From Octopus bimaculoides (lineage: Eukaryota), in the NCBI RefSeq assembly GCF_001194135.2, contig NC_068985.1:60733392-60786205 (forward strand): a DNA stretch of 52,814 bases, given 5' to 3'. The notes beneath the pieces were generated by a model that was given only the letters and a program-made list of their open reading frames with translations, did not search any database and had not been told where the DNA came from. A program made the position numbers and the translations under genes. Each line of letters starts with the position of its first letter. The stretch's first letter is position 1. Positions 5,700 to 44,597 of the stretch are shown here, one piece after another.

Positions 5700-5909
5700 A
5701 TTGGAAGGGCATCCTGCTGTAAAACCATGTCAAAACTGATCTCAACTGTGCAAATGCAGAGTGGTTGGTGTTAGGAAGGGCATCTAGTTGTAAAAACCAT
5801 GCCAAAACAGACACAGAAGCATGGTGCAGGCTCCAGTCTGGCCAGCTCCTGTCAAACTGTCCAATCCATGCCAGCATGGAAGGAGGATGTTAAACAATGA
5901 TGATGATGA
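5700..5909 (+). mobile_element. 3' end of an RTE-X-type LINE or derived element, with (GAT)n tail
   Basis: gtggttggtgttaggaagggcatc...ccatgccagcatggaa...gttaaacaatgatgatgatga matches the 3' UTR of the ORF2-bearing copies at 21996-22851 and 30899-34181. Confidence 0.8.
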
Positions 5910-10012: not shown

Positions 10013-11243
10013 CAGGGGTTGGACAAAATAATGGAAACACCTTAAAATTTCAAACAGATTTATTTTAATATGGGGTACGACCACCTTTGGCAGTAATTAT
10101 AGCTTGAATTCTATGAGGTATCAACTCGTACAAAGTTTGAATTGTTTCCAAAGGAATTTTTGTCCATTCTTCAGCTAAAACAGTCTCCAATTCTTGTAGT
10201 GATAATGGTGGAGGATATTGACTCCTTACATTTTTTTCTAAAATGCACCATAAATGTTCAATGATATTGAGATCTAGGGACTGTAGTGGCCAGATAAGAT
10301 GTTCAGCTTCACTAGAATGTTCCTCATGCCATTCAGTAACAACTTTAGCTGTGTGAATTGGTGCATTAACATCCTTAAAGATTGTGTTTCCCTCCGGAAA
10401 CTGTTCCGCAACCATAGGATGAATTTAATCAGATAAAATGCTTAAATAATCTTGACAATTAATTCTATGGATTTCCAAGATATAACACCCCCAGATCCTC
10501 CTCCATGTTTAACAGTTGGAAGAAGGCAGTCTGGGTCAAATGCTTTTTTTGGCTGTCTCCACACATATACTCGGCTAGTGGTTGGAAATATGGTAAAGGA
10601 TGGCTCATCTGAGAAAATAACATACTTCCACTGTTCTAGAGACTAATTCTGTAGGATTTTACTCAACTCTAAATGCTTTGCAACGTTTGTTTTTGAAAGT
10701 AGTAGTTTTCTGATTGCAGCCCTCCGATGAAATCTGGCTTTGTGCAGCTCCTGGCAAAGAGTTTTTGTGGAAAAGAGGTTCTCGAGGCAGTCATTAAGCT
10801 CTGCAGTAATTTTGGGAGCTGTACTTTTGTGATCCCTTCTAACAATGCGTGTAAGAGTCTGGCAGTCCCTATCTGAAAGTTTTGGTTTTCTTCCGGAGTT
10901 TTGTTTCGACGAGGAGGTTTTCTCTTCTTTCTCAAAGGCTGTCATTACTTTCGTGACAGTACTTTTTGATGCACCAAACATTTCAGCTGTTTTCGTTACG
11001 CTAGCGCCTGCCATACGAGCACCAACAATTTGACCTCTTTGAAAGTCCAATAGATCTATCATTTTAATGAATTTTAATTACCTTTTTCTGATGATATCTG
11101 AAAAGAAACAGCAATTTTAGCAAAACATACTAAGCAACACTAATAATAAATCAAAAAACATAAAAACAAACAAGCTTTTGATGGTTTTATGGATATTTCA
11201 AAATTATGATGCTTGGTGTCACCATTATTTTGTCCAACCCCTT
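10013..11243 (-). mobile_element. Tc1-family DNA transposon, 1231 bp, transposase pseudogene (about 10065-11062)
   Basis: Left TA+caggggttggacaaaataatggaaacacc and right ggtgtcaccattattttgtccaacccct(t)+TA. The HTH N-terminus (QRGQIVGARMAGASVTKTAEMFG) and catalytic segment (FKDVNAPIH...DLNIIEHLW) are present. The ORF is broken and the second catalytic Asp appears replaced by Val. Confidence 0.95.
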
Positions 11244-12955: not shown

Positions 12956-13137
12956 ATCATCATCATCATCATCGTTTAACGTCCGCTTTCCATGCTAGCA
13001 TGGGTTGGACAATTTGACTGAGGACTGGTGAAACCGGATGGCAACACCAGGCTCCAGTCTAATTTGGCAGAGTTTCTACAGCTGGATGCCCTTCCTAACG
13101 CCAACCACTCAGAGAGTGTAGTGGGTGCTTTTACGTG

Positions 13138-13140
<3 letters not shown>
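12956..13140 (-). mobile_element. RTE-X-type 3' end with (GAT)n tail
   Basis: Near-identical to the reverse complement of 22684-22851. Confidence 0.85.
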
Positions 13141-15140: not shown

Positions 15141-15628
15141 GTACCTGATCACCAGAGCAATAGCCAGGGTCAGCTCCAACCAGCAATATATTGTGTGCGT
15201 GTATATATATATATATATATATAAATATTAGTTACAGAATAAAAACGTCAGGTTAACGACTCAACATATCACACTCCCTCAATGATCATACATAAAAAAT
15301 ACAACATAATCCACCAAACATAGGAATAAAAAGATATAAAAATAACGTAAGAAAAATAAAATAAATAAAAGAATAAGAAATATATAAGAAGTAAGATGCA
15401 AGATATAGAACGTATAATATAAAAATTTATATACAAATATATTATTTCAACCGATAACATACAAATAAATTAAGAATAATAAATTTGAGTTAAAGGTATA
15501 ACACAATATACATATATATCATTTCATAAAAGTTCCAAATCAAGTTAAAGTTAAAATTAATACGATTAAAAATTCAAATATATATCGATCGATATAGAAT
15601 AAAATAAAGAAATGAGGTAAAACAAAAT

Positions 15629-16260
15629 AGTCTGAGCGATAATCCTGTGGACCCTATGTAGTTTTTGTGGCAGCCCGAGCATCTTATTACATAAATAAGG
15701 TTTTCTGAGGCACAAGTAAAGTCAGATTTAACTTTGAATTTTTGTCCCTCTTTGAAGAGGAGTTCTGAACCTTCTAGAATGTTTGGGCATGTTGCGCAAT
15801 TTGGTCGACCACAGAATACCGAATGATACCTTTTAGTGAGCATATTGAAGTGATACAACAGTTTTGACTGAGTAAGCAACAAGATAGAGGTGATTGTGGA
15901 AAATGATGGAGAGAAACTTAGAAGTTTGGGAATGGGTGTTGCAGTAGATATGTGAGGGCATTGAGAATGAAAGCAGATAAGTGAGATGTTAGTGATGGAG
16001 AACAGCACAGGGGAAATATGGAGCAGAAAGGAAGTAATTGGTGAAGACAGTAGGTGGGGTAAGTTAATGGGAAATGGAAGTAGTTTGGGGTGGAGAAGAA
16101 AGGTAACTGAGTAAGCTGGAAGAGGTAGTATGTGTCAATTTTACTCTCGGGTGATAGAAAAGTGATTGGTGTTAGAGGAAGAAATGTGGTGGGTGAAGGC
16201 TGATGGAGCAGAGATGGGGATGGATCAGAGCCCCTCATGGACAAGCATTACCAAGGTAGT
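15629..16260 (-). mobile_element. Penelope-like element fragment: GIY-YIG endonuclease with a probable decayed RT thumb upstream
   Basis: CGRPNCATCPNI...FTCASENLIYVIRCSGCHKNYIGSTGLSLR (about 15629-15820) is the PLE GIY-YIG signature with its Cys motifs. The pyrimidine-rich upstream stretch is only tentatively RT. Confidence 0.8.
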
Positions 16261-19084: not shown

Positions 19085-19375
19085 TCAGACTGGCTTGCTT
19101 CTTGGAATCCTTCTAACCCAAAGTTTGAAGTCACTAATGACTAACCCATGTTGAGGAAAACACGTTTCACCTGGGAAGGTCTTCACATTTAAAAGCAACC
19201 ATCTTTTCCACTTTCTGGTGAGAATGAAGTCAATCTGGCTTATGTTCCTACCAGGTTGATAAGTGAACAGGTGACTGGCTGGTTTCCTAAAGTTTGTGCT
19301 GCAGATCATTTGGTCATTTGCAGGAATCAATTCCATGGAAGCTACCCAGATGCTGCCTAACAAGCCCATGTAACT
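19085..19375 (-). mobile_element. RTE-X LINE APE-endonuclease fragment
   Basis: ICSTNFRKPASHLFTYQPGRNISQIDFILTRK...VKTFPGETCFPQHGLVISDF is paralogous to 33540-33760. Confidence 0.85.
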
Positions 19376-21257: not shown

Positions 21258-21995
21258 GGTGAGTTAAGTTAGAGGTTATAACAACTGTCTAAGGGATACT
21301 TGTATCCAATGAATCCACTGGTGTATTAATCATGAGCATTGGCGTTAATGCTCATAAATAATAGGTAATGACAAAAATAAACTAAAGTTTATCAATATTC
21401 AAGGAAAACAGAAAATGGAGATACGGTTGATGAATAACAATTGATTTACATCAATTATCATTTATTAATTAATTACAAAATGACTGAATCTCAACTTACA
21501 GCTGTTTCAGTGAGCATGATTCTTAGTTCTAACTGCCACAATAATAGTAATGATAGTTATCATTATAGGTATTTATTTATACCAAATTGAATCACAAAAC
21601 TGAATCAGAGTGAAAAAGTAAATAAAATATAAGTAAAAAGAATTTAGTTAAGTCAAAAAATAAAGCGTAAAATGTAAGAACAATAATTAGAAATACCAAT
21701 AGTTCTAAAACTAAATAATAATAGTTGACTATAATTTACGTTAATTGATTTCGTATGCATTTTACTGCAAGCCCAGTGCAAAAGATTCAATGTCGTATAC
21801 CAATGCACAGTTCACAACATAGTAAATAACTCCTATAGCTACTACATTAGATCTACCACATATTTTAAACAAAGGTATCATGCAAATTTAAACTCGTTTA
21901 AATATAAAGAGAATAGCAATTCCACGTCACTAGCCAGCCACATACACCATCTAATTAATAGAAAAATACAATATAAGCTTTCCTGGGCTATAATA

Positions 21996-22851
21996 GACCT
22001 GGAATGAGGTGGTGAAGCACGACCTTCAAACTTTAGGCCTCGCCAAGGCAATGACTAGTGACCGGGACCTTTGGAAATATGCAGTACGTGAGAAGACCCG
22101 GCAAGCCAAGTGAGAGCATAATCTGTGGCCTCTGCCAGAAGTGTAGCCAGCTCACTTATTCATATCTTTACTTCATTGGACACTAAAATCTGCTTGCGAA
22201 GACCTGTTGAGGCAAGTGAATTTGAAATTGAAATCAAACCAAATTCGATGACTGGCACCCATGTCAACCTCTCCTTCATTGGACACTAAACTCTGCTTGT
22301 GAAGACCTGTTGGGGCAAGTGAAATCGAAATCGTAATTGAACCATATTCAATGACTGACACCTGTGCCAGTGGAGCACTAACAGCATTGTCTGAGCATGA
22401 TCATTGCCAGAGCAGCTGTCTGGCTTCCGTGCTAGTGGCCTGTAAATAGTACCATTTGAGCGTGATCGTTACCAGCGCCGCCTTACTGGCACGTTAGGAA
22501 ATCATTCGAGCAAGGTCGTTGCCAGTGCCGCTGGACTGGCCCCTGTGCAGGTGGCACATAAAAAACACCATTTTGAGCGTGGCCATTGCCAGCACTGTGT
22601 GACTGGCCCTTGTGCCGGTGGCATGTAAAAGCACCCACTACACTCTTGGAGTGGTTGGTGTTAGGAAGGGCATNNNNNNNNNNAAGCACCCACTACACTC
22701 TTGGAGTGGTTGGTGTTAGGAAGGGCATCCAGCTGTAGAAACTCTGCCAGATCAGATTGGAGCCTGGTGCAGCCTTCCGGTTCACCAGTCCTCAGTCAAA
22801 TTGTCCAACCCATGCTAGCATGGAAAGCGGACGTTAAACGATGATGATGAT
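21996..22851 (+). mobile_element. RTE-X LINE 3' fragment (ORF2 end plus 3' UTR and (GAT)n tail); contains a 10-N gap
   Basis: TWNEVVKHDLQTLGLAKAMTSDRDLWKYAVREKTRQAK*, then a repetitive UTR ending cgttaaacgatgatgatga. Confidence 0.88.
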
Positions 22852-23242
22852 TATGTATTTCATGTATTTTAGTTTTAAATTATTTAGACTTTAAAAATTT
22901 CCAGTTAATTTTTTCTTATTCTCACAGCTAAAATACATTATGTCATTTTAACAGCTTAAATACATATTTCTATCTATTTATGTTATACTTTTTATTTACG
23001 TCATATTTTCACGCAATATATTTCTTATAAATGCTAAGTTCTACGAATTACGTTTGAAATTTTAGTTTAACAGAGATTCTTCGATAAGATAAGTTATGGT
23101 TTTATTTTAAGTAATATCGTTAAATGTTTTTTGATTATTTATTTATTGTTAAAACAAGTATATTTTTATATATTTATTTGATATTTATTACAAGTTAAGA
23201 TATGTAAATTGATTTTATTATTATTTTTATTATTATTATTAT

Positions 23243-26049: not shown

Positions 26050-27960
26050 TGGTAAATGAAATGACAAAAGCAAAAGATTCCCATACTGGCTCAGATGTTG
26101 CCTGAGTAAAGAAGGTCTGCATTAGTTTGTTCCCGCCCTGGCAGCCAGTGCAGTGTAAGACAGGACACATGAAAACAATGAATATTGTCAAATGGATTGT
26201 TGGAACACTGCATGATAAAACAAAATATCAAAGACCTGAGTATCGAACTGCTCTAGTTGCAAAGGAATTAGATTGATACAACATGAACATAGCTGCTTTG
26301 TGTGAAACAGAATTATCTGGATATGACAGCAAGGGAGATCATGGGTACACATACTTCTGGAGTGGGAAAAAGGAAGAGGAAAAGAGGGAAGCTGGTTTTG
26401 GGCTTGCAATGAAGATCTCCATCACTCTGCAACTGGAGAAAGACCCAACATCAGTTAATGACAGGATCATAAACAATGAGATTAACACTCCACAAAAATG
26501 TATATGTCACAATTGTTAGTGTCTACATACCCACAATGAAAAACCATCAGGAAGTGAAAGAAGAATTCCATGCTAAGATGAGAGAGATGCTGTGCAAAGT
26601 TCCCTGCAAAGACAAGTTGATAATTGCAGGAGATCTCAATGCAGGAGTAGAGAGAGAGATGCGGACAGATGACCTAGGCAAACATGGAGTTGGAAAGTGC
26701 AATTTAAATGATGAGCTTTTTCTAGACCTGTGTTCTGAGTTCATCTTAGTAATTACAAAAACTGTCTTCGAGCACAAAGCTCACCAAAAGACCACTTGGA
26801 TGCACCCTTGTTCCAAATATTGGCACTTGTTAGACTACATAATTACCCAAAGAGATCAGAATGATGTCTTGAATACAAGAGCCATGACAGGTGAAGACTA
26901 CTCTACAGAACACTGCATTATCAGATCAAAGGTCACTTTTCCTTCTGGAAGTGAAGCATGAAGACAAAAGGCTGACCTAAAAATAAGCTAAACATCATGA
27001 AACTCAGAGACCTCAAAGTGGAACAGGAATTTCCGTAACAGCTTGATAAGGTGTTGCAAGGATGGAAATATAAAGAACTTGAAGAAAAAGGGAACATCTT
27101 GAAAATAACTTGAAACAGTTCAATAAGTCCTTGGCAAACTGGTGAAAAAATATCAAGATTGGCTCAACATGAATGATATCCAACTAGAGATCTCTGCTAG
27201 AGAAAAAGAACATTACAAAGGCAAAGCAACTAAATTACAATACAAGGTCAAACTGAGGAAAACTAGTGGAAGGAAGAAGGAAGCTGCAACAATGTACTAG
27301 GAAAATGAAATCAGATTCATGTGAGGCCAAAGCTGAAGAACTACAGCATCCTGCTGATAAAAAAAAAGGTTATGAAAGCATTTTACTCAAGACTTTGAGA
27401 GGTATGCAAGCTACAGAAAAGGGAAAAAAAGTACTTCAGGAAAACTCCGAGGTTACTGATAAATTTTCCAATCACTTTGACAGCCTGCTTAATATCCCAG
27501 GCTATGCTGCATTTGAGAAGGACTATGCTGGTAACCATCCGATCCTTAGATGATGAACCCATTTACAAAGAATTCAATGATGTAATTAAACAAATGAAAG
27601 AAGGTAAAGTACCTGGAAGATGTTGCATACCTGCTGAAATCTGGAAGCATGGAAAGATACAGGCATCATTCATATCTTCAAAAATGGTTGTAGAGCAGAC
27701 TGTGGAAACTACTGAGGAATATCTCTTTTACAAAAGCTGGGAAGATCTTGGCTTGTATTCTTTTAAACAGACTAAATGAATACATTTGAGACTCAGTGTG
27801 GCTTCCATTATTGTAAAAGTGCTGTGGACATGATCTTCACCAAATTCAGGAAAAATGGATTGAGCAGAACATGCCTATGTATGCAGTGTTCATAGACTTC
27901 ACAAGCTTCCTCAATGATTCATCAACTTGGTCATGTCTCTGCACAAAGGAATGCAGACAT
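26050..27960 (+). mobile_element. RTE-clade (BovB-like) LINE 5' portion: APE endonuclease and start of RT, decayed
   Basis: From the ATG at 26169: MKTMNIVKWIVGTL...RPEYRTALVAKEL...NIAALCET...GYTYFWSG...AGDLNA...KTTWMHPCSKYWHLLDYIIT...GKVPG..CIPAEIWKHG, with multiple stops and frameshifts. Confidence 0.9.
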
Positions 27961-29736: not shown

Positions 29737-29964
29737 CTACATGCACCAATGATTATTGGTATAAATGTAAATTTATAATCAGGGTAGAGGAGTTGCTGAT
29801 TACAAAGTAGTTGTCAGCAGATATTCTCATTCTCACTGATTTTTGAAAAGGTTATTCACATCTGCAGGATAATTAACCTCTATGACAGTACAAGATTTTC
29901 TGTTGGGTCACTTACGTTTACACTTGACAGAATTTTTGATGAGAATGTTCCACTAATATTCCTT

Positions 29965-30124
29965 TCTGGGCAAAATGCTTAGCAGCATTTCATTTGTCTT
30001 TATGTTCTGAGTTCAAATTTCACTAAGGTCGACTTTGTCTTTCATGTCTTTCATCCTTTCTGGGGTCAATGTAATTGACTCATCCCACCCCCAAATTGCT
30101 AGCCTTGTACCAAAATTTGAAACC
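29965..30124 (+). mobile_element. 5'-truncated family A SINE with 10-bp TSD
   Basis: aatattcctt at 29955-29964 and 30125-30134 flanks the insertion inside the RLE LINE. Confidence 0.85.
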
Positions 30125-30682
30125 AATATTCCTTGTGCTGATATGTATATGTGTATTCAATAGCAGAGGTGTTGTTTATATCTATTCCAGCGTAGTCTTT
30201 CATGTGGAAGGCATTGTATATTGTTTTAGCAACAACATCATGTCTCATTGGCAAGTAGTTCTTTGATGACAATTTTGGACAACTGCTGATTACATGTGTT
30301 ATGTCCTCATCAGAACAGTGACATAATCAGCATCTGTAGTTGCAGCTTGAAATTTTTAGGACTTTGCTGTTCTGTTTGTCCATGAGATATTTTGTAGCTA
30401 TCTCTTCTCTTGGATTACAAAAGCATAGTCTTCATGATGTGTTATGATGTAGCAGCCACAAGTCTGGGAGATATTACATTTCATGCAATCTTTTCCTATT
30501 TTATGGGAAACAAGCTCAAGCATAACTCTTTTGTAGCAGGTAGAGTATTTTCTTATTAGATCTTTGCTGAAGTGTGCTATTCCTGTATATCTGAGTTTGG
30601 GAGGTCATCAAGAAGTGAATGTTTCTTGAAGAGTTCACTACCAGCCAGCAGGATGCTGTTCACTTCATTTTTGAACACTTGA

Positions 30683-30870
30683 TTAACATTTTAGCATTTA
30701 AACCAGCCATATCTGGCCAAAATATTCTACATTTGTATGCTCAAACCAACCTGATCTGGCTTCTTATACCTTACCCTACAACGTTATTTTAAAATTAAAT
30801 AACCACATCATCAAAATCTCAAAACTAATAATGCATGATAAATTCAAAACAATGGGAATAAATAAGTTTT
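30683..30870. mobile_element. Truncated MITE-like repeat starting TTAA-C
   Basis: ttaacattttagcatttaaaccagccatatctggccaaaatattc... The right end is missing. Confidence 0.4.
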
Positions 30871-30898
30871 GCCTTACATATATATATATATATATATA

Positions 30899-33800
30899 AT
30901 CATCATCATCATTTAACATCTGTTTTCCATGCTGGCATGGGTTGGATGGTTCAACTGGGGTCTGGGAAACCAGGAGGCTGCACCAGGCTCCAATCTGATC
31001 TGGCAGTGTTTCTACAGCTGGATGCCCTTCCTAACGACGACCACTACGATAGTGTAGTGGGTGCTTTTTACGTGCCACCACCACAGGGACAAGAGAAGCT
31101 GGCTTCAACCATGATCAGATGGTGCCTTTTATGTGCCACCAGCATGGAAGCCAGTCAAAGTGGCACTGGCATCGTCCACATTTGGATGGTGATTTTTACG
31201 TGCTACCAGCATGAGGGTCACAACTACAATTTCCATTTGATTTGATTTTGATATTGCTGTTGATGTTGATGTACTTGACTCAATAGGTTTCCTTAAGCAT
31301 GGCATGTCGCACTGCAATCCAAAGTACTTTTGAGTGGGCTGGTTATGCGACACTGGTGTAGGTTACAGCTGTGGACTCACTTTATTTGCCAGGTCTTCTC
31401 AGTGACAGCATATCTCCAGAGGTCGCAGTCTTTTGTCATTGCCTCTGTGAGGCCCAACGTTTGAAGGTCATGCTTCACCACCTCATCCCATGTTTCCTGG
31501 GTCTCCCTCTACTCTGGATTCCTTCAACTGTTTGAGAGTAGCCCTTCTTCACACAGCTCTCCTTGTCCATCCACAGGCAAACGTCTCTCTTGCACTCCAC
31601 ATCCGATGCTTCTTATGTCTAACATTTCTCTCAAGGTGCTTACACTCTGTCGTGTGTGCACACTGACATTACACGTCCAGTGGATCATGCTTGCTTCATT
31701 TCTTTCAAGCCTACACATGTCTTCAGCAGTCACGGTCCATGTTTCACTGCCGTAAAGCATGGCAGTTCACATGCATGCATCATACAATCTACCTTTCACT
31801 CTGAGCGAGAGGCCCTTTGTCACCAGTAGGGGTAGAAGCTTTCTGAACTTTGCTCAGGCTATTCTTATTCTAGTGGTAACACTCTCTGAGCATCCACCCC
31901 CACTACATACTTCTGCTATCAACTACTTCTAGTTTCTCCCCTGACATGTGATGGAATCTGTTTTCTGAGCATCTGTGGTGTTTATTGCCCTTGTGCATCT
32001 GCCACACACAAAAGCTATCTTCCCAGTTAATCTTTGATGTTGCTGCACAAGTTATGTGTCCATAGCTTACACTGGGTACATCTTATGGAGTTTCTACCTA
32101 CACCTTTTCTACAGATTGAGCAGGTCCATCTACCTGATGGGCTGTGTGATGTGTTCGCCGTCCTACTTACTAGAACCTAGGTCTTTGCAACATTGATTCT
32201 AAGGCCCTTTGATTCTAAACCTTGCTTCCACACTTGAAGTTTCTTCTCTAGTTCTGGTAGGAATTCTGCTATGAGGGCATAGAGGAGTAACCTGTCTTGA
32301 ATTCCCTTGTTATTGCTTGGAGGACTATGATGAATAAGAGGGGCTGAGGGCTGATCCTTGGTGGGCCTCTACGTCTACCCAGAATTCTTCACTATACTCA
32401 TTTTCAATCCTAACCCTACTAATGGAATCTCTGTATAGGGCCTGTACAACCCTTATTAACCATTCGTCAGTCCCCAGTTTCTGCATCGCCCACCAGATAA
32501 GAGATCAGGGGACCCTGTCAAAGGCTTTCTCTAAGTCCACAAAAACCAAATATAGGGTTTTATCTTTGACTAGGTATTTCTACTTAGCACAAAACTGAAC
32601 TGCATCTCATCTAAGCAGACTGTCTCCTTAATTAGTTGGGCTATGACCCTCTCTGTGACTTTCATCACTTGATCCAGCAGTTTGATACCCCTGCAATTAT
32701 TTCTGTCTAGAGCATCACCTTTACCCTTGTTGCAGTTGACTAAGGTGCTGCTACACCAGTCATTGGGTATGACTCCATCATTAACTACCTGGTTTACAAT
32801 ATGGGTGACCAGGCCATAGCACACACCACCAGATGTTTTAAGCATCTCAGCAGGGATTCCTGATGGGCCAGGGGGTGGGGATTTTCCTGGCTTCATACCC
32901 TTAATTGCTTTATCTACCAGGGTGCTGTCTATTCAAATAGCTGGCCCCTCTACTAGATCAACATTTGGCAGGCTCTCCTCCTCCCATTCATTCTCCACGT
33001 CCAGCAGTCTTTCATAATGGCTTCTCCAAGCCTTTCTTTTCCAAATCATTAAAAGCAAATGCACCATCATCCATGCGGACACATTTCTCTCCTGTGACAT
33101 CACAATTTTCTCGCACACACTGTCTTGCAATCCGGAATACTTCAGTTCTTTGGTTCTCACATTGCTGGAAAATGGCAAACTTCTTATTTGCTTCGCCCTT
33201 GGCTATGTATACCCATCACCCAGCCTTCCTTTTGGCTATCTGGTGCAATTCCCTGCTACCCCTACCCTTCCAGGCCTGTTTCTTTGCTCTGATGGCTTTG
33301 TCTACTGTATTATTCCACCACCGTGTTACTCTAAGTCTGGAAGGGACTTTGCACCAGCCGCAGACTTAGTCTGTGGCACTCAGTAAGCTGTCCTGTAAGG
33401 ATTTCCAGTTACCTTCTATGTCTGAGGACTGTAACTCCTCTTCCCTCTCATCAAATTTCTTAGTGAGGATGTCCCTAAATGTCTGACCATGTGAAGGGTT
33501 CTTTAGCTTCCAAATCCTTCTCTTCTGGATTGATCTTCTTCTTGGCATCCTTCTGGTCTTGAGTCGAAAGTCACTAATGACTAGTCTATGCTGGTGGGGT
33601 GCATTCCTCACCTGGGAGGGTCTTTGTATTTAAGAGCAACTCTGCATCCTGCTGTCTGGTGAGGATGAAATCAATCTGGTTAGCAGAGTCACCTGATTGA
33701 TAGGTTATCAGGTGGTTGTGTGGCTTCCTGAACTTAGTGTTGCAGATTAAAAGGTTACATACATCACAGAACTCCAGTTGCCTAGTTCCCTCATCATTCT

Positions 33801-34181
33801 GGGAACCAATACCATGGCCCCTGTGTACACTAGTGAAGATACCGGATTTCCAACCAATATGTCCACTAAAATCTCCAGCCACAAAGATGAGGTCATTGCC
33901 ACTCGTCTTTGAGGTAGTCTGTAGAAAGGTATCACAAAAGTGGTCCTTCTGATCATTTGGTAGCCCTGCTTGTGGGGCGTAGGCAGAGATAATTGCAGAT
34001 GTGCTGTTCTGCAGGACTAGCCTGAGCTTAAGCACTCTATTGTATACCCTGACAACATTTATGACCTTATCCACGCATTTCTCCGCAAGGAGTATGCCTA
34101 CACCCCCTACTCCATCTAGGTTACCTTGCCAGAAGACTTTATACCTATGTGCCTTGCCTGTGAGGACCCTAGATGAAGCTG
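30899..34181 (-). mobile_element. RTE-X LINE, about 3.3 kb, 5'-truncated ORF2 pseudogene (APE - RT - PHD-like finger - thumb - 3' UTR - (GAT)n)
   Basis: APE: GVGGVGILL..IISAYAPQ..AGDF..NQIDFILTR. RT: GPSGIPAEMLK..IPNDW..RGIKLL..FVDLEKAFDRVP..HQGSALSPLLF. C-terminus: LYGSETW..RGRPRK.WDEVVKHDL. Many frameshifts. Confidence 0.93.
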
Positions 34182-34224
34182 AAGCACAGGGCATATGCTG
34201 GATTGCTTTGTGCTTATATGTTTA

Positions 34225-34312
34225 ATGTGGGTGTACCTGCTGATGAAGATTTTGCCTAGCAAATTATTTTATTTGCTAAGAAAAGTTTGAAACCATGGTC
34301 CAGGAGATAGAT
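34225..34312 (+). ncRNA. Type I hammerhead ribozyme, copy 1
   Basis: cctg(34236)-CTGATGA(34240-46)-agatt..tagcaaat/atttgcta..agttt-GAAA(34289-92)-ccatg-GTC(34298-300)-cagg. Confidence 0.85.
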
Positions 34313-34695
34313 GGTAAATGTTTTTATTTTTCATTCCCTTCGAAATTTATCCCTAATAGTGGTTTGGATTTTAGTTGTTCCTTCTAGCATGCAAGGATTC
34401 TTATGATGGACATCTCTTATGTGTTTAAATGTACACTGTATTTATATGAATAATATATAGTCTATTGACTAAATTTCTTTTACACGCTAGGCCACTGGTA
34501 GTAGAAAATTCTAATATTTCTTATTACCCTGATATTATTAATTATTGAGAATTTTTTTCTGGAAAATTTTCGAATGAAGAGCCGGCATTATCTTTGTTTA
34601 CTGCTGACAATGAGCTGTGCTTGCATGGTAGTTTTGAAAAATTAGAATGTATAAGCTCAGGGCATATGCTGGATTGCCTTGTGCTTATATGTTTA

Positions 34696-34783
34696 ATCTA
34701 GGTGTACCTGCTGATGAAGACTTCGCCTAGCAAATTATTTTATTTGCTAAAAAAAGTCTGAAACCATGGTCCAGGAGATAGAT
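34696..34783 (+). ncRNA. Type I hammerhead ribozyme, copy 2 (best preserved)
   Basis: atcta-ggtgta-cctg-CTGATGA(34711-17)-agact..tagcaaat/atttgcta..agtct-GAAA(34760-63)-ccatg-GTC(34769-71)-cagg-aga-tagat. All core nucleotides and all three stems are present. Confidence 0.9.
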
Positions 34784-35096
34784 GGTAAATGTTTTTATTT
34801 TTCATTCCCTTCGAAATTTATCCCTAATAGTGGTTTGGATTTTAGCTGTTCCTTCTAGCATGCAAGGAATCCGGTGATGCATACCTCTTATGTGTTTAAA
34901 TGTACACTGTATGAATAATATATAATATATATTCACTGTATGAATAATATATAGTCTATTGAATAAATTTTTTTTCACGCTAGGCCACTGGTGGTAGAAA
35001 TTTCTAATATTATTAATATATATGTATGTATATATATATACACATGTATATGTATGTATATATACATATATATATGTATGTATATATACATATATA

Positions 35097-35196
35097 NNNN
35101 NNNNNNNNNNNNNNNNNNNNNNNNNNNNNNNNNNNNNNNNNNNNNNNNNNNNNNNNNNNNNNNNNNNNNNNNNNNNNNNNNNNNNNNNNNNNNNNN
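35097..35196. other. Assembly gap (100 N); 10-N gaps also at 22674-22683 and 24132-24141
   Basis: Direct reading. Confidence 1.
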
Positions 35197-35925
35197 ATAT
35201 ATATATATATATATACATATATATGTATGTATATATATATAAATATATATATATATACACACATATGTATATGCCCTTATTACATGATGAACTTTATATG
35301 TAGGTATGTAAGTATGGGGATGCGCATATGTAATTAGTATATGTCTGATACAAACAGAAGCTTCTTCTTCTCTCTCTCTCTCTCTCTCTCTAATATATAT
35401 TTATATCTGATTCCATCATTACCTAACATAATGATGTTGGTGACTAGAATGCATCTTATATATATATATAAAAACAAACTAGCACAGTGGATATTATCTT
35501 GAAAGTTCATGATGTAAAATATGCCAAAGAAACAAAATAAATAAGATGTTTGCGTATGCATATATATATGTGTGTGTCTATGAATGCGTGTGTGTTTATC
35601 TGTTTGTATGCAAATGCATTAAAGGAGGAGGGTGAAGATCATGATTTCAAATCGTCAAAAATAATCCATAAATACAAAAATTATTACATTTGTCATGGAA
35701 TATTTAACTTGGAATTTGGAATAATGCTCTATTCATAGCAACGGAAAGAAATAAGCAAACTATTATTGCTATGTGTGTATGTGTGCTTGTGTATTGTTAT
35801 GGTGTGTGTTTACACTTATTTATAGATATATTCTAAACTACATATATGTACATACACATATCTTTAGCTCTTGACTTGGTTTCAATAATAACAGTTAAGG
35901 CTATGTTGTGACATTACTTTAAAAC

Positions 35926-35980
<55 letters not shown>

Positions 35981-36065
35981 CATGATGATGATGATGATGT
36001 ATATGTTTGTGTTTCTATGTATGTATATGTATAAATGTGTGTGTGTGTTTGTATACATATATATA

Positions 36066-37321
36066 ATGGGTCATCCCATAAATAATGTGGCTTTTTTATA
36101 CTTCTTTTATATTTCAAAGTTAAGATTCTTTTTTAATCTAAAATATACTCTCCTTCATTTTCTACAATGCTCTTCCATCTACCTGGTAGACTTGCAAGGC
36201 CCCTCTTCCAAACTTCACTTGTCCATGATGAAAAATACTCCTCTAGTACTGTTCTGACCTCGCCGAGAGAATTCATATTTTTTCTGTCCAAATGATTTTG
36301 AAGATTGTGGAATAAATAATAATCAGATGGGGCCATGTCCAGCGAATATAGTGGGTGGGGCATCATTTCCCATTCAAACTACTCCAGCCTTTGGAATGTC
36401 ATCCCTGCTGTATGTGGCCAAGCATTATCCTGATGGAAGAACACATTTTGTCTTGAAACCAAAAATGGTTGTATTATTTCTTGTGCTGACTTAAGCTGCT
36501 CAAGCTGCTCACAGTAGATCTCCTTTGTTGTCATTTGGTTTGGGTTTAAAAGTTCAAAGTGGACTAAACCTTTCATATCCCACCAAACAGATAACAACAC
36601 CTTACATGGTTGAAGACCTTCTTTAGCCTGGGATGCCTATGTTTCTTCTTTCCCTACCCACTGTCTCCAGCACTTGACATTTTTATAGAGAACCCATTTC
36701 TTGTCACCAGTTACTATTTGGTCCAAAAAAGGTTCATTTCTGAGATGTGACAGCAAAGAAGAGCATACATTTACTCTCTGTGCATGGTTAGTTTGTGTGC
36801 ATGGAAAGTTTGTGAGGAACCCATTGACCTAATTTGCTGACTTTTCTGATGACATGCAGGTGTTGATGGACGGTTGAATGACCAAATCCAAGCTTCTCTG
36901 CTAGTACCTCAACAGTTACGATGGGGCTTTGTTCTATCAGGGTTTGCAGGATGTCCTCGTTGAGCTCAACAAATCTTCCAGGATGAGGCTCATCTTCTCG
37001 GCTGTAGTCTCTGGCTTGGAATTTCTGGAACCACTGATGACACTGGCTTATGCTTAGTGTCTGACCCCCATTTACTGCGTTAATATTCCTCACACTTTCC
37101 ACTGTGTTGTTGCCATTATGGAACTCATAAAACAAAATATGCCAAATATGCTCCTTTGTTACTTCCATTATAGCTTTGAAAAAATAACTGTTAGAATGGA
37201 ACTGCACTCTTCAAAATTTGCACTAAGAATAAATACAAGGTAAAATTACTACTTGCTTTCAGAGCAAGTTGATGCAGGTACATGTAATTGAAAAAATCGC
37301 ATTATTTATGGGATGACCCAA
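36066..37321 (-). mobile_element. Mariner (DD34D) transposon, 1256 bp, transposase pseudogene (about 36133-37207)
   Basis: Left TA+(a)tgggtcatcccataaataatg and right cattatttatgggatgaccca(a)+TA. The motifs WVPHKLS, FFHQDNAWPH and HPLYSLDMAPSDYYLF are present, and the frame is broken. Confidence 0.95.

Positions 37322-44129: not shown

Positions 44130-44597
<468 letters not shown>

What the first reader, a model, noticed from the sequence alone, without database searches (positions are those of the whole stretch)
34182..35011. Tandem hammerhead-ribozyme repeat: candidate cephalopod retrozyme producing a 471-nt self-cleaved, possibly circular, RNA
Seen: a repeat with a 471-bp period in which each unit carries a complete type I hammerhead (stem I cctg/cagg, CUGAUGA, stem II, GAAA, stem III, GUC). 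The best copy extends stem I past an internal loop (atcta/tagat). The core is identical in both copies although the flanks have diverged, and the two stem II changes in copy 1 (agact>agatt, agtct>agttt) only convert G-C to G-U pairs. The unit has no coding ORF. Established: tandem non-coding units with minimal type I hammerheads are the hallmark of metazoan retrozymes, which yield small circular RNAs and are thought to use Penelope-like (PLE) machinery. Inference: transcription through the array releases the 34301-34771 monomer, which could circularise and be retrotransposed. A PLE GIY-YIG relic lies in the same window. I cannot check whether this family has been described in cephalopods.
Basis: partly seen in the sequence, partly recalled or inferred. 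Interest (0 to 1): 0.9.

Follow-up and report, generated by a model that had tools for sequence, protein, structure and literature searches.

The report
Hammerhead-ribozyme tandem repeat in octopus DNA
An octopus genome segment holds about 1.8 copies of a 471-base non-coding repeat, each with a self-cutting "hammerhead" RNA motif, which is most likely a worn remnant of a known kind of small mobile element (an animal retrozyme) and not a new kind of system.

Summary
Positions 34182-35011 are a direct repeat with a 471-bp period (1.76 units; 6.5% substitutions plus a 23-nt indel). Each unit carries a complete type I hammerhead motif (34236-34304 and 34707-34775, + strand). A structural descriptor finds only these two in the window, against 0.03 expected per shuffled window.

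Helix III is a perfect 8-nt palindrome (ACCAUGGU), and cofolding predicts the classical double hammerhead. The unit is non-coding, has 32.5% GC, and folds better than shuffles (z = -3.2).

The most likely reading is a remnant of a tandem, non-autonomous hammerhead retroelement of the metazoan non-LTR retrozyme type. It lies in an octopod genome: the neighbouring LINE's best hits are Octopus species.

Weak points:
- There are only 1.76 copies. The left end is cut by a 5'-truncated RTE-like LINE and the right end is lost in a microsatellite and an assembly gap.
- No further copy could be found in any reachable collection.
- No Rfam hammerhead model matches it, even at E <= 10.
- The 10.1-11.1 pair is A-U, not the conserved G-C.
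- The hammerhead is no better conserved than the rest of the unit.

Cleavage, circularisation and mobilisation by Penelope-like elements (PLEs) are inferred, not shown. This is a new member of a known kind, of modest interest.

The parts
34182..34652 (+). Repeat unit 1 (one full 471-bp period measured from the LINE junction). Its left edge is where the LINE abuts, not a natural terminus.
   Evidence: LINE homology stops at 34179
34653..35011 (+). Repeat unit 2, partial (corresponds to unit 1 positions 34182-34518). It carries a 23-nt internal duplication-type insertion at about 34913-34935.
34225..34312 (+). Hammerhead 1 with its extended helix I. Core motif 34236-34304: CCUG / CUGAUGA 34240-46 / helix II 34247-88 (two G-U pairs) / GAAA 34289-92 / ACCAUGGU 34292-99 / C17 34300 / CAGG 34301-04. 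The distal helix I, AUGUG/UAGAU, has one mismatch.
34696..34783 (+). Hammerhead 2 (the better copy). AUCUA 34696-700, internal loop, CCUG 34707-10, CUGAUGA 34711-17, helix II 34718-59 (a 6-bp closing stem plus an AGCAAAUU/AUUUGCU hairpin, 42 nt), GAAA 34760-63, palindromic helix III ACCAUGGU 34763-70, C17 34771, CAGG 34772-75, UAGAU 34779-83.
34301..34771 (+). Predicted 471-nt RNA monomer released by cleavage 3' of C17 in both hammerheads. MFE -115.9 kcal/mol, z = -3.16 against 100 shuffles; 32.5% GC.
   Evidence: product inferred, not observed
31255..34179 (-). 5'-truncated RTE/'CFDP2-like' LINE (APE and RT remnants) that bounds the array on the left. The junction shows GAAGC microhomology. 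APE residues 1-61 are missing from the window.
35012..35272 (.). (TA)n/(TATG)n microsatellite interrupted by a 100-N assembly gap (35097-35196). Unit 2 ends here and no unit homology resumes beyond it.

Best explanation
This is a decayed 1.76-unit remnant of a tandem array of a short, non-coding, hammerhead-bearing retroelement in an octopod genome. It is the animal 'non-LTR retrozyme' / hammerhead-satellite kind.

Proposed mechanism. The first step rests on anatomy and computation here; the rest are inferred from the described family.
1. Read-through transcription of two or more units brings two hammerhead domains together. A single hammerhead has only a 2-bp helix III and is not the favoured fold. 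The two 8-nt palindromes ACCAUGGU pair with each other and helix I strands swap, forming a double hammerhead as in newt and axolotl repeats.
2. Cleavage 3' of C17 (after 34300 and 34771) releases a 471-nt RNA with a 5'-OH and a 2',3'-cyclic phosphate.
3. A host RtcB-type ligase could circularise it.
4. The reverse transcriptase/endonuclease of a Penelope-like element could copy the multimeric or circular RNA into AT-rich DNA as tandem units.

This particular locus looks old and probably inactive. The copies differ by about 6.5%, copy 1 has weakened helices, a LINE later inserted at its left edge, and its right end is lost in a microsatellite.
For: - Tandem 471-bp repeat.
- Two complete type I hammerhead motifs that are the only descriptor hits in the window, against 0.03 expected per shuffle.
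- Perfect 8-nt palindromic helix III with a 2-bp stem and CAUG loop, which is the signature of metazoan type I hammerheads that act as dimers (PMC4209133, PMC7229834).
- RNAcofold predicts the double hammerhead at -43.1 kcal/mol, against -33.3 for the two separate domains.
- No coding capacity. GC is 32.5%. Described animal retrozymes are tandem, under 45-50% GC and non-coding (PMC7229834).
- The monomer folds better than every one of 100 shuffles.
- No PLE ORF is adjacent, so it is not a pLTR of a resident full-length PLE.
- PLEs exist in this genome (relic) and are recently active in Octopus vulgaris (PMC13282606).
- The right end abuts AT-rich microsatellite, which is the kind of target PLE endonucleases cut (PMC8557442, PMC11167929).
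Against: - Only 1.76 units are present, so a one-off local duplication of a solitary hammerhead-bearing fragment gives the same picture.
- No second locus of the family was found anywhere, so its status as a repeat family is unproven.
- No Rfam hammerhead model matches, even at E <= 10 on 106 nt. A canonical-looking control hammerhead at least gave sub-threshold hits.
- The 10.1-11.1 pair is A-U, whereas G-C is highly conserved in genuine motifs (PMC4209133).
- Helix I is only 4 bp before an internal loop.
- The hammerhead is not more conserved than the rest of the unit.
- 471 nt lies just above the described size range of 170-400 nt RNAs and 150-450 bp repeats.
- There are no expression data.
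Confidence: 0.62

Rival explanations
1. It is a fragment of a Penelope-like element's own terminal region (pLTR or 3' end with its hammerhead). The fragment was left by a 5'-truncated or partial-tandem PLE insertion, or was locally duplicated. It is not an independent non-autonomous retrozyme family.
For: - PLE hammerheads sit in pLTRs, have a long helix II, a short helix I of 4-5 bp and a palindromic helix III, and most PLE insertions are 5'-truncated (PMC4209133; bioRxiv 10.64898/2026.07.22.740005).
- This motif has a 4-bp helix I, a long helix II and a palindromic helix III.
- PLEs are present in the window.
- The two categories are thought to grade into each other.
Against: - The period is 471 bp with no ORF between the copies, whereas PLE pLTRs are separated by a 2-4 kb RT-EN body.
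- No RT or GIY-YIG coding remnant lies on the + strand next to the array.
- The unit shares no similarity with the 3' regions of the three PLE copies I could fetch (L005, L006, L007).
- The PLE min-hammerhead hallmark of an unpaired base between A9 and 10.1 is absent.
Confidence: 0.2
2. It is a genuine hammerhead-derived relic that is now catalytically dead and not a mobile family. A single old segmental tandem duplication is simply decaying as neutral DNA.
For: - Only 1.76 copies, at 6.5% divergence.
- The motif shows no excess conservation.
- The A-U pair at 10.1-11.1.
- G-U pairs and a helix I mismatch in copy 1.
- No other copy in about 127 kb of Octopus DNA.
- Interrupted by a LINE.
Against: - This does not explain where a complete hammerhead with a dimer-type palindrome came from, unless from a hammerhead-bearing element. 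It therefore overlaps the best explanation for origin and differs only on present activity.
- All core positions are intact in both copies.
- There is an 87-nt identical run across the cleavage site (p = 0.025).
Confidence: 0.13
3. It is a chance match. An AT-rich duplicated segment happens to satisfy a hammerhead descriptor.
For: - A stringent descriptor still hits 3% of shuffled windows.
- Looser sequence-only patterns are expected 0.13-0.22 times per window.
- Rfam finds nothing.
- The G10.1-C11.1 pair is missing.
Against: - The hit also has features the descriptor did not demand: a perfect 8-nt palindromic helix III, a 6-7-bp helix II with a further 8-bp hairpin, and a distal 5-bp helix I.
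- It lies inside one of only three long-period tandem repeats, which together cover about 2.4% of the window. The joint chance is of the order of 1e-3 or less.
- The cofold gives the textbook double hammerhead.
Confidence: 0.05

Closest known systems
Metazoan non-LTR retrozymes (Cervera & de la Pena 2020, PMC7229834; coral, mussel, axolotl)
   Same: Head-to-tail repeats of a few hundred bp, each with a type I hammerhead. Non-coding and low in GC. No LTR, PBS or PPT. Predicted highly paired monomer RNA. Co-occurrence with PLEs in the genome.
   Different: The unit is 471 bp, just above the reported 150-450 bp repeats and 170-400 nt RNAs. Helix II is 42 nt with an internal hairpin instead of a 4-bp stem with a loop. 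The 10.1-11.1 pair is A-U. Only 1.76 units are seen, copy number is unknown, and there is no RNA evidence.
Newt satellite 2 / axolotl HHR_Amex repeats (double hammerheads; Forster et al. 1988 as cited in PMC6155905 and PMC7229834)
   Same: A very weak helix III capped by a palindromic tetraloop, so a single motif is disfavoured and two tandem copies form an extended helix III. My cofold reproduces exactly this arrangement.
   Different: The amphibian motifs keep the canonical loop 1-loop 2 contacts and a short helix II. The taxon differs (a mollusc). The amphibian repeats number 10^4-10^5 copies, whereas copy number here is unknown.
Minimal hammerheads of Penelope-like elements (Cervera & de la Pena 2014, PMC4209133)
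   Same: Short helix I (4-5 bp), an enlarged helix II, palindromic 15.2-16.2/loop 3, presumed dimeric action and low intrinsic activity.
   Different: Here there is no flanking RT-GIY-YIG ORF and no unpaired base between A9 and 10.1. The G10.1-C11.1 pair is replaced by A-U. A real 2-bp helix III with a tetraloop is present.
Schistosoma Sm-alpha hammerhead SINE-like repeats (as cited in PMC6155905)
   Same: A non-autonomous invertebrate repeat of a few hundred nt that carries a type I hammerhead, found both dispersed and in tandem.
   Different: Sm-alpha hammerheads are fast monomeric ribozymes with a stable fold and defined tertiary contacts. This one is predicted to need a partner copy.

Membership tests
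Hammerhead ribozyme, type I | Conserved core C3-U4-G5-A6-N7-G8-A9, G12-A13-A14, A15.1-U16.1 and H17 at the cleavage site | tested here: met
   Both copies have CUGAUGA ... GAAA ... ACCAUGGU-C.
Hammerhead ribozyme, type I | Three helices around the core, with helix I open (5' and 3' ends in helix I) and helices II and III closed | tested here: met
   Descriptor hits with helix I 4 bp, helix II 6-7 bp and helix III 2 bp plus a tetraloop. Only two hits in the window, 0.03 expected. Structure evaluated.
Hammerhead ribozyme, type I | Highly conserved G10.1-C11.1 pair closing helix II | tested here: not met
   The pair is A10.1-U11.1 in both copies. The alternative register with a bulged A would leave an extra U before G12. 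This pair is conserved rather than strictly required, but the departure probably lowers activity (inference).
Hammerhead ribozyme, type I | Score at or above the gathering threshold of an Rfam hammerhead covariance model (RF00163 and relatives) | tested here: not met
   No hammerhead family appears at gathering, at E <= 10 on 2.1 kb or on 106 nt. Control: a canonical-looking type I motif in L007 also fails gathering and reaches only 22 bits, so the Rfam models are insensitive to hammerheads with a minimal helix III.
Hammerhead ribozyme, type I | Mg2+-dependent self-cleavage 3' of H17, abolished by core mutations | not testable with these tools
   Needs in vitro transcription of monomeric and dimeric constructs.
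Metazoan non-LTR retrozyme | Tandem repeat with at least two consecutive units, each carrying a complete type I hammerhead (operational definition, bioRxiv 10.64898/2026.07.22.740005) | tested here: met
   Two motifs 471 nt apart inside a 471-bp direct repeat. The second unit is incomplete.
Metazoan non-LTR retrozyme | Non-coding, low-GC unit without LTR, PBS or PPT | tested here: met
   Longest ORF inside the unit is 35 aa. GC is 32.5%. No tRNA-like part.
Metazoan non-LTR retrozyme | Unit size within the described range (repeats 150-450 bp, RNAs about 170-400 nt). This is typical, not strictly defining. | tested here: inconclusive
   471 bp is slightly above the published range (PMC7229834).
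Metazoan non-LTR retrozyme | A repeated family: many monomers, dimers and multimers dispersed in the genome | not testable with these tools
   The source genome is not searchable here. There were 0 further copies in the window, in about 161 kb of fetched loci (about 127 kb of it Octopus: L001-L004, L006), in JGI metagenomes or in IMG/VR.
Metazoan non-LTR retrozyme | Expression as linear and circular monomer RNAs | not testable with these tools
   No transcriptome access. A pseudo-ORF search and an exact-product look-up for unit ORFs found nothing.
Penelope-like element pLTR hammerhead | Motif lies in a terminal repeat flanking an RT + GIY-YIG ORF on the same strand | tested here: not met
   The neighbours are a minus-strand LINE and a microsatellite followed by a mariner relic. 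The only PLE coding remnant is at 15631-15951 on the minus strand, 18 kb away.
Penelope-like element pLTR hammerhead | Min-hammerhead architecture: an unpaired base between A9 and 10.1, helix II of 7-8 bp, helix I of 4-5 bp, and a palindromic 15.2-16.2 | tested here: inconclusive
   Helix I of 4 bp and the palindrome are met. Helix II is 6-7 bp plus a hairpin. The unpaired base is absent.

The most novel reading that the evidence does not exclude
The unit could represent a cephalopod retrozyme family whose hammerhead has an expanded, two-tier helix II and an A-U closing pair. Such a motif would be invisible to Rfam-based annotation. The family could still be active in octopods, producing about 470-nt self-cleaved circular RNAs, larger than those described in other animals, and be mobilised by the PLE families that are recently active in Octopus.
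Probability: 0.2. Interest if true: 0.5.

Novelty: new member of a known kind. Interest (0 to 1): 0.3.

Why it matters
If the family is real and expressed, it would extend hammerhead retrozymes and their circular RNAs to cephalopods. In these animals transposable elements, including LINEs active in the brain, are under close study. It would also add a hammerhead architecture (long bipartite helix II, A-U at 10.1-11.1, dimer-type helix III) that covariance-model annotation misses. Counts such as the '235 hammerhead 1 ribozymes' reported for the giant squid genome may therefore be underestimates. It would not change the current picture of how such elements work. As it stands, the locus is one worn example of something already described across metazoa, including molluscs.

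Tried and rejected
- **Rfam:** at gathering and at E <= 10 there were no hammerhead hits. The mir-297/mir-1277/mir-466 'hits' at 35016-35275 are microsatellite artefacts.
- **TRF:** it does not report the 471-bp repeat. The repeat finder and BLASTN do.
- **Pattern scans for family members:** two scans of JGI metagenome contigs and one of IMG/VR found nothing.
- **Protein-level searches for family members:** a search with a 70-aa stop-free pseudo-ORF of the unit and an exact-product look-up of a 30-aa ORF identical in both copies both found nothing.
- **Fetching the source locus:** window ORFs are not on record.
- **Fetched loci:** about 161 kb around LINE and PLE homologues (L001-L011, about 127 kb of it Octopus). 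None aligns with the unit. The script stopped with an error before its L008 comparison, so that test did not run.
- **LINE split by the array?** Rejected. The missing APE N-terminus (residues 1-61) is nowhere in the window. The LINE is simply 5'-truncated against the unit, with GAAGC microhomology.
- **Array continues beyond the LINE or the gap?** Rejected. There is no unit homology at 29900-31300 or 35273-36200.
- **Hammerhead as the LINE's 5'-processing ribozyme?** Rejected. It is on the opposite strand, and the ribozymes reported for RTE elements are twister-type (PMC7761336).
- **Word-indexed search with the GIY-YIG relic:** empty. Pfam and PDB gave nothing either. The exhaustive HMMER search then resolved it.
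- **Marine-metagenome PLE contigs (L008-L010):** the descriptor found no hammerhead before the script stopped with a file error; L011 was not scanned.

Full report

Yes. The repeat finder reports 34182-34446 and 34653-34917 as a direct repeat, 93% identical, with a start-to-start spacing of 471. BLASTN extends the pair to 34182-34518 / 34653-35011. A global alignment gives 22 substitutions in 337 aligned columns (p = 0.065, JC 0.068), plus a 23-nt internal duplication and a 1-nt indel in copy 2. The array is therefore 1.76 units, and the segment 34519-34652 is present once. TRF did not list the array.

Each unit contains a complete type I hammerhead. Coordinates for copy 2 are below; copy 1 is the same shifted by -471.

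| Element | Sequence | Copy 2 coordinates |
|---|---|---|
| Helix I, 5' strand | CCUG | 34707-10 |
| Core | CUGAUGA | 34711-17 |
| Helix II (42 nt) | 6-bp closing stem, internal loop, AGCAAAUU/AUUUGCU hairpin | 34718-59 |
| Core | GAAA | 34760-63 |
| Helix III | ACCAUGGU | 34763-70 |
| Cleavage-site base | C17 | 34771 |
| Helix I, 3' strand | CAGG | 34772-75 |

- Past an internal loop, copy 2 has a further AUCUA/UAGAU helix. Copy 1 has one mismatch there.
- The two stem II differences are G-C versus G-U, as stated.

**2. Is it more than chance?**

I wrote a type I descriptor requiring CUGANGA, helix II of at least 4 bp, GAAA, helix III of at least 2 bp ending in U, H17, and helix I of at least 4 bp.
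- It hits only these two sites on either strand of the 52.8-kb window.
- In 300 dinucleotide-preserving shuffles the mean was 0.03 hits, and 9 of 300 had any hit.
- The two sites descend from one duplication, so they count as one event.

That one event has features the descriptor did not ask for:
- a perfect 8-nt palindrome as helix III;
- a second hairpin in helix II;
- a distal helix I;
- a location inside one of only three long-period tandem repeats in the window, which together cover about 2.4% of it.

I put pure chance at about 5%.

**3. What weakens it**

- No Rfam hammerhead model matches at the gathering score, at E <= 10 on 2.1 kb or on a 106-nt stretch.
  - As a control, a canonical-looking type I hammerhead that I found in an unrelated contig (L007 11858-11903, minus strand) also fails gathering. 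It reaches only 22 bits against Hammerhead_3.
  - Rfam is therefore insensitive to hammerheads with a minimal helix III. Still, the control was at least recognised and the octopus motif was not.
  - I think the likely reasons are the 42-nt helix II and the A10.1-U11.1 pair (inference).
- The G10.1-C11.1 pair is described as highly conserved in genuine motifs (PMC4209133). Here it is A-U in both copies.
There are 4 of 22 substitutions in the 69-nt motif against 18 in the other 268 nt (Fisher p = 1).
- An 87-nt run of identity spans GAAA, helix III, the cleavage site and the next 70 nt. It is mildly unusual (p = 0.025).

**4. Surroundings**

- *Left edge.* It is not a natural terminus. A LINE on the minus strand, with an APE domain (Exo_endo_phos_2) and RT remnants, runs up to 34179.
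  - Its best protein relatives are annotated Octopus bimaculoides, O. sinensis and O. vulgaris proteins at 61-78% identity. This confirms an octopod origin.
  - DNA alignment to an O. sinensis copy (L002) shows that the window's copy lacks the 5' part. Homology stops at 34179, with a GAAGC microhomology at the junction.
  - APE residues 1-61 are nowhere in the window.
  - So a 5'-truncated LINE inserted against a pre-existing unit. No unit sequence resumes on the far side of the LINE.
- *Right edge.* Unit 2 runs into a (TA)n/(TATG)n microsatellite that contains a 100-N assembly gap. Nothing beyond it resembles the unit. A Mos1-type mariner relic follows on the minus strand. The true unit number could be larger if repeats were collapsed at the gap.
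- *PLE coding sequence.* No RT or GIY-YIG coding remnant adjoins the array on the + strand.
An exhaustive HMMER search found 1059 relatives. The long ones (712-773 aa) carry a C-terminal GIY-YIG domain at the matching position, and two of the six scanned (P0058, P0063) also show RVT_1. It is a real fragment of a Penelope-like element (PLE), but it is broken, 18 kb away, on the other strand, and unrelated in sequence to the unit.

**5. How it most likely works**

- *Single motif.* It has only a 2-bp helix III. In a 97-nt context the hammerhead fold lies 5-9 kcal/mol above the minimum-energy fold.
- *Two motifs together.* Cofolding the two hammerhead domains gives the textbook double hammerhead. 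ACCAUGGU pairs with ACCAUGGU as an 8-bp helix III, and the helix I strands swap. The energy is -43.1 kcal/mol, against -33.3 for the two domains apart. This behaviour is established for newt and axolotl repeats and proposed for PLE hammerheads (PMC7229834, PMC4209133, PMC6155905).
- *The monomer.* It is 32.5% GC, non-coding and folds better than all 100 shuffles (z = -3.16).

By analogy with described animal retrozymes, the pathway would be:
1. multimeric transcription;
2. dimer-dependent cleavage to a 471-nt RNA;
3. ligation by a host RtcB-type ligase;
4. reverse transcription and integration by PLE machinery into AT-rich DNA (PMC7229834, PMC7761336, PMC11167929).

Step 2 is only predicted, from the fold; none of the four steps has been observed for this element.

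The divergence of 6.5% between copies, the weakened helices in copy 1 and the later LINE insertion suggest that this locus is old. On the O. vulgaris repeat clock of PMC13282606 it would be very roughly 10 million years old. It is probably silent.

**6. Relatives elsewhere**

I could not obtain any.
- Two pattern scans of JGI metagenome contigs and one of IMG/VR found nothing.
- A protein search with a pseudo-ORF found nothing.
- Exact-product look-ups found nothing.
- BLASTN against about 161 kb of fetched loci, about 127 kb of it Octopus DNA, found nothing.

This bounds the family only loosely and does not show that it is single-copy. The key tests are therefore left open: copy number, other arrays, covariation, and a PLE with matching termini.

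**7. Comparison with what is known**

Type I hammerheads in short, AT-rich, non-coding tandem repeats are the defining picture of metazoan non-LTR retrozymes. These have been characterised in a coral, a mussel and the axolotl (PMC7229834) and surveyed in vertebrates (bioRxiv 10.64898/2026.07.22.740005). The operational criterion in that preprint is at least two consecutive units each with a complete hammerhead, and this locus meets it.

In the papers I could search, nothing describes retrozymes in cephalopods. The giant squid genome paper lists 235 Rfam 'hammerhead 1' hits without further analysis (PMC6962438). PLEs are abundant and recently active in Octopus vulgaris (PMC13282606).

The differences from described cases are modest:
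- a unit slightly above the published size range;
- a long two-tier helix II;
- an A-U pair at 10.1-11.1.

**8. Verdict**

I give about 0.6 to a retrozyme-type remnant, about 0.2 to a PLE-terminal fragment, about 0.13 to a dead one-off relic, and about 0.05 to chance.
- It is a new member of a known kind, with interest of about 0.3.
- The most novel reading still open is an active cephalopod retrozyme family with a variant hammerhead that Rfam cannot detect. I give that about 0.2.

Noticed in passing
window 31255-34179 (-): A 5'-truncated RTE/'craniofacial development protein 2-like' LINE with APE and RT remnants. It is 85% identical in DNA to a copy in O. sinensis (L002). Its 5' junction with the repeat shows GAAGC microhomology.
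   Followed up: yes
window 15631-15951 (-), within ORF 15574-16008: Fragment of a Penelope-like element: the CxxC linker plus the first half of the GIY-YIG domain. Pfam does not detect it, but it has 1059 HMMER relatives. The full-length relatives scanned carry a C-terminal GIY-YIG domain, and two of them also RVT_1. No hammerhead motif lies downstream of it.
   Followed up: yes
window 34288-34374 vs 34759-34845: An 87-nt run of perfect identity between the two units. It spans GAAA, helix III, the cleavage site and 70 nt downstream. It is mildly longer than expected from the overall divergence (p = 0.025). It could reflect gene conversion or constraint.
   Followed up: partly
L007 11858-11903 (-) (ENA contig ctg63286, organism unknown): A textbook type I hammerhead: GGGUCA/UGACCC helix I, GGCU/AGCC helix II, and a 10-nt palindromic helix III, ACUACGUAGU. 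It lies about 1.1 kb from a PLE endonuclease ORF, on the opposite strand. It fails the Rfam gathering score (22 bits). A SECIS_1 hit (36.7 bits) lies at 13051-13119 in the same contig.
   Followed up: partly
L006 24474-24559 (+) (O. bimaculoides CM046603.1): A hammerhead-like motif with CUGAGGA, a 6-bp helix II enclosing a 51-nt insert, ACGUAUGU as helix III and only a 3-bp helix I. It lies 2.2 kb downstream of a PLE RT-EN remnant (21456-22289). It could be a second octopus hammerhead with a long helix II, or it could be chance; about one relaxed-descriptor hit is expected by chance in the DNA scanned.
   Followed up: partly
L005 1230-1270 (+) (ENA metagenome scaffold; the PLE EN product itself is 71% identical to the window relic by HMMER, 73% by tblastn against its DNA): Downstream of the PLE ORF lies a motif with a perfect 6-bp helix I (CGCUAA/UUAGCG), CUGACGA, GAAA and a palindromic ACCGGU helix III, but no convincing helix II. 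It does not fold better than shuffles.
   Followed up: partly
window 36133-37207 (-) and 10065-11062 (-): Relics of Tc1/mariner transposases. The first has HTH_48 and Transposase_1 matches (Mos1 type). The second reads like a Tc1 transposase with several frame breaks but was not scanned against Pfam.
   Followed up: partly
window 44130-44471 (-): An open frame encoding a clean PH domain (Pfam PH, E = 2e-18). It is probably an exon of a host gene, so the window may be largely intronic or intergenic DNA next to that gene.
   Followed up: no
window 12956-13140, 22684-22855, 30878-31272, 5756-5909: A short interspersed repeat of about 170-350 bp recurs in the window and several times in the Octopus loci L002-L004. 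It appears to share its sequence with the 3' tail region next to the LINE, so it is probably a SINE or LINE-tail family.
   Followed up: no
window 35016-35096 and 35197-35275: Sub-threshold Rfam 'microRNA' matches (mir-297, mir-1277, mir-466, mir-3149) are produced by the (TA/TATG)n microsatellite on both strands. They are artefacts.
   Followed up: yes
L006 24628-25124 and 25363-25859: Two 497-nt stretches are 100% identical on either side of a 238-N gap in the O. bimaculoides assembly. This is most likely a scaffolding artefact around a MITE-like element with inverted repeats.
   Followed up: partly
window 26476-26961 (+) and 19109-19336 (-): Two further LINE APE-domain fragments of the same general family as the one next to the repeat.
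   Followed up: no
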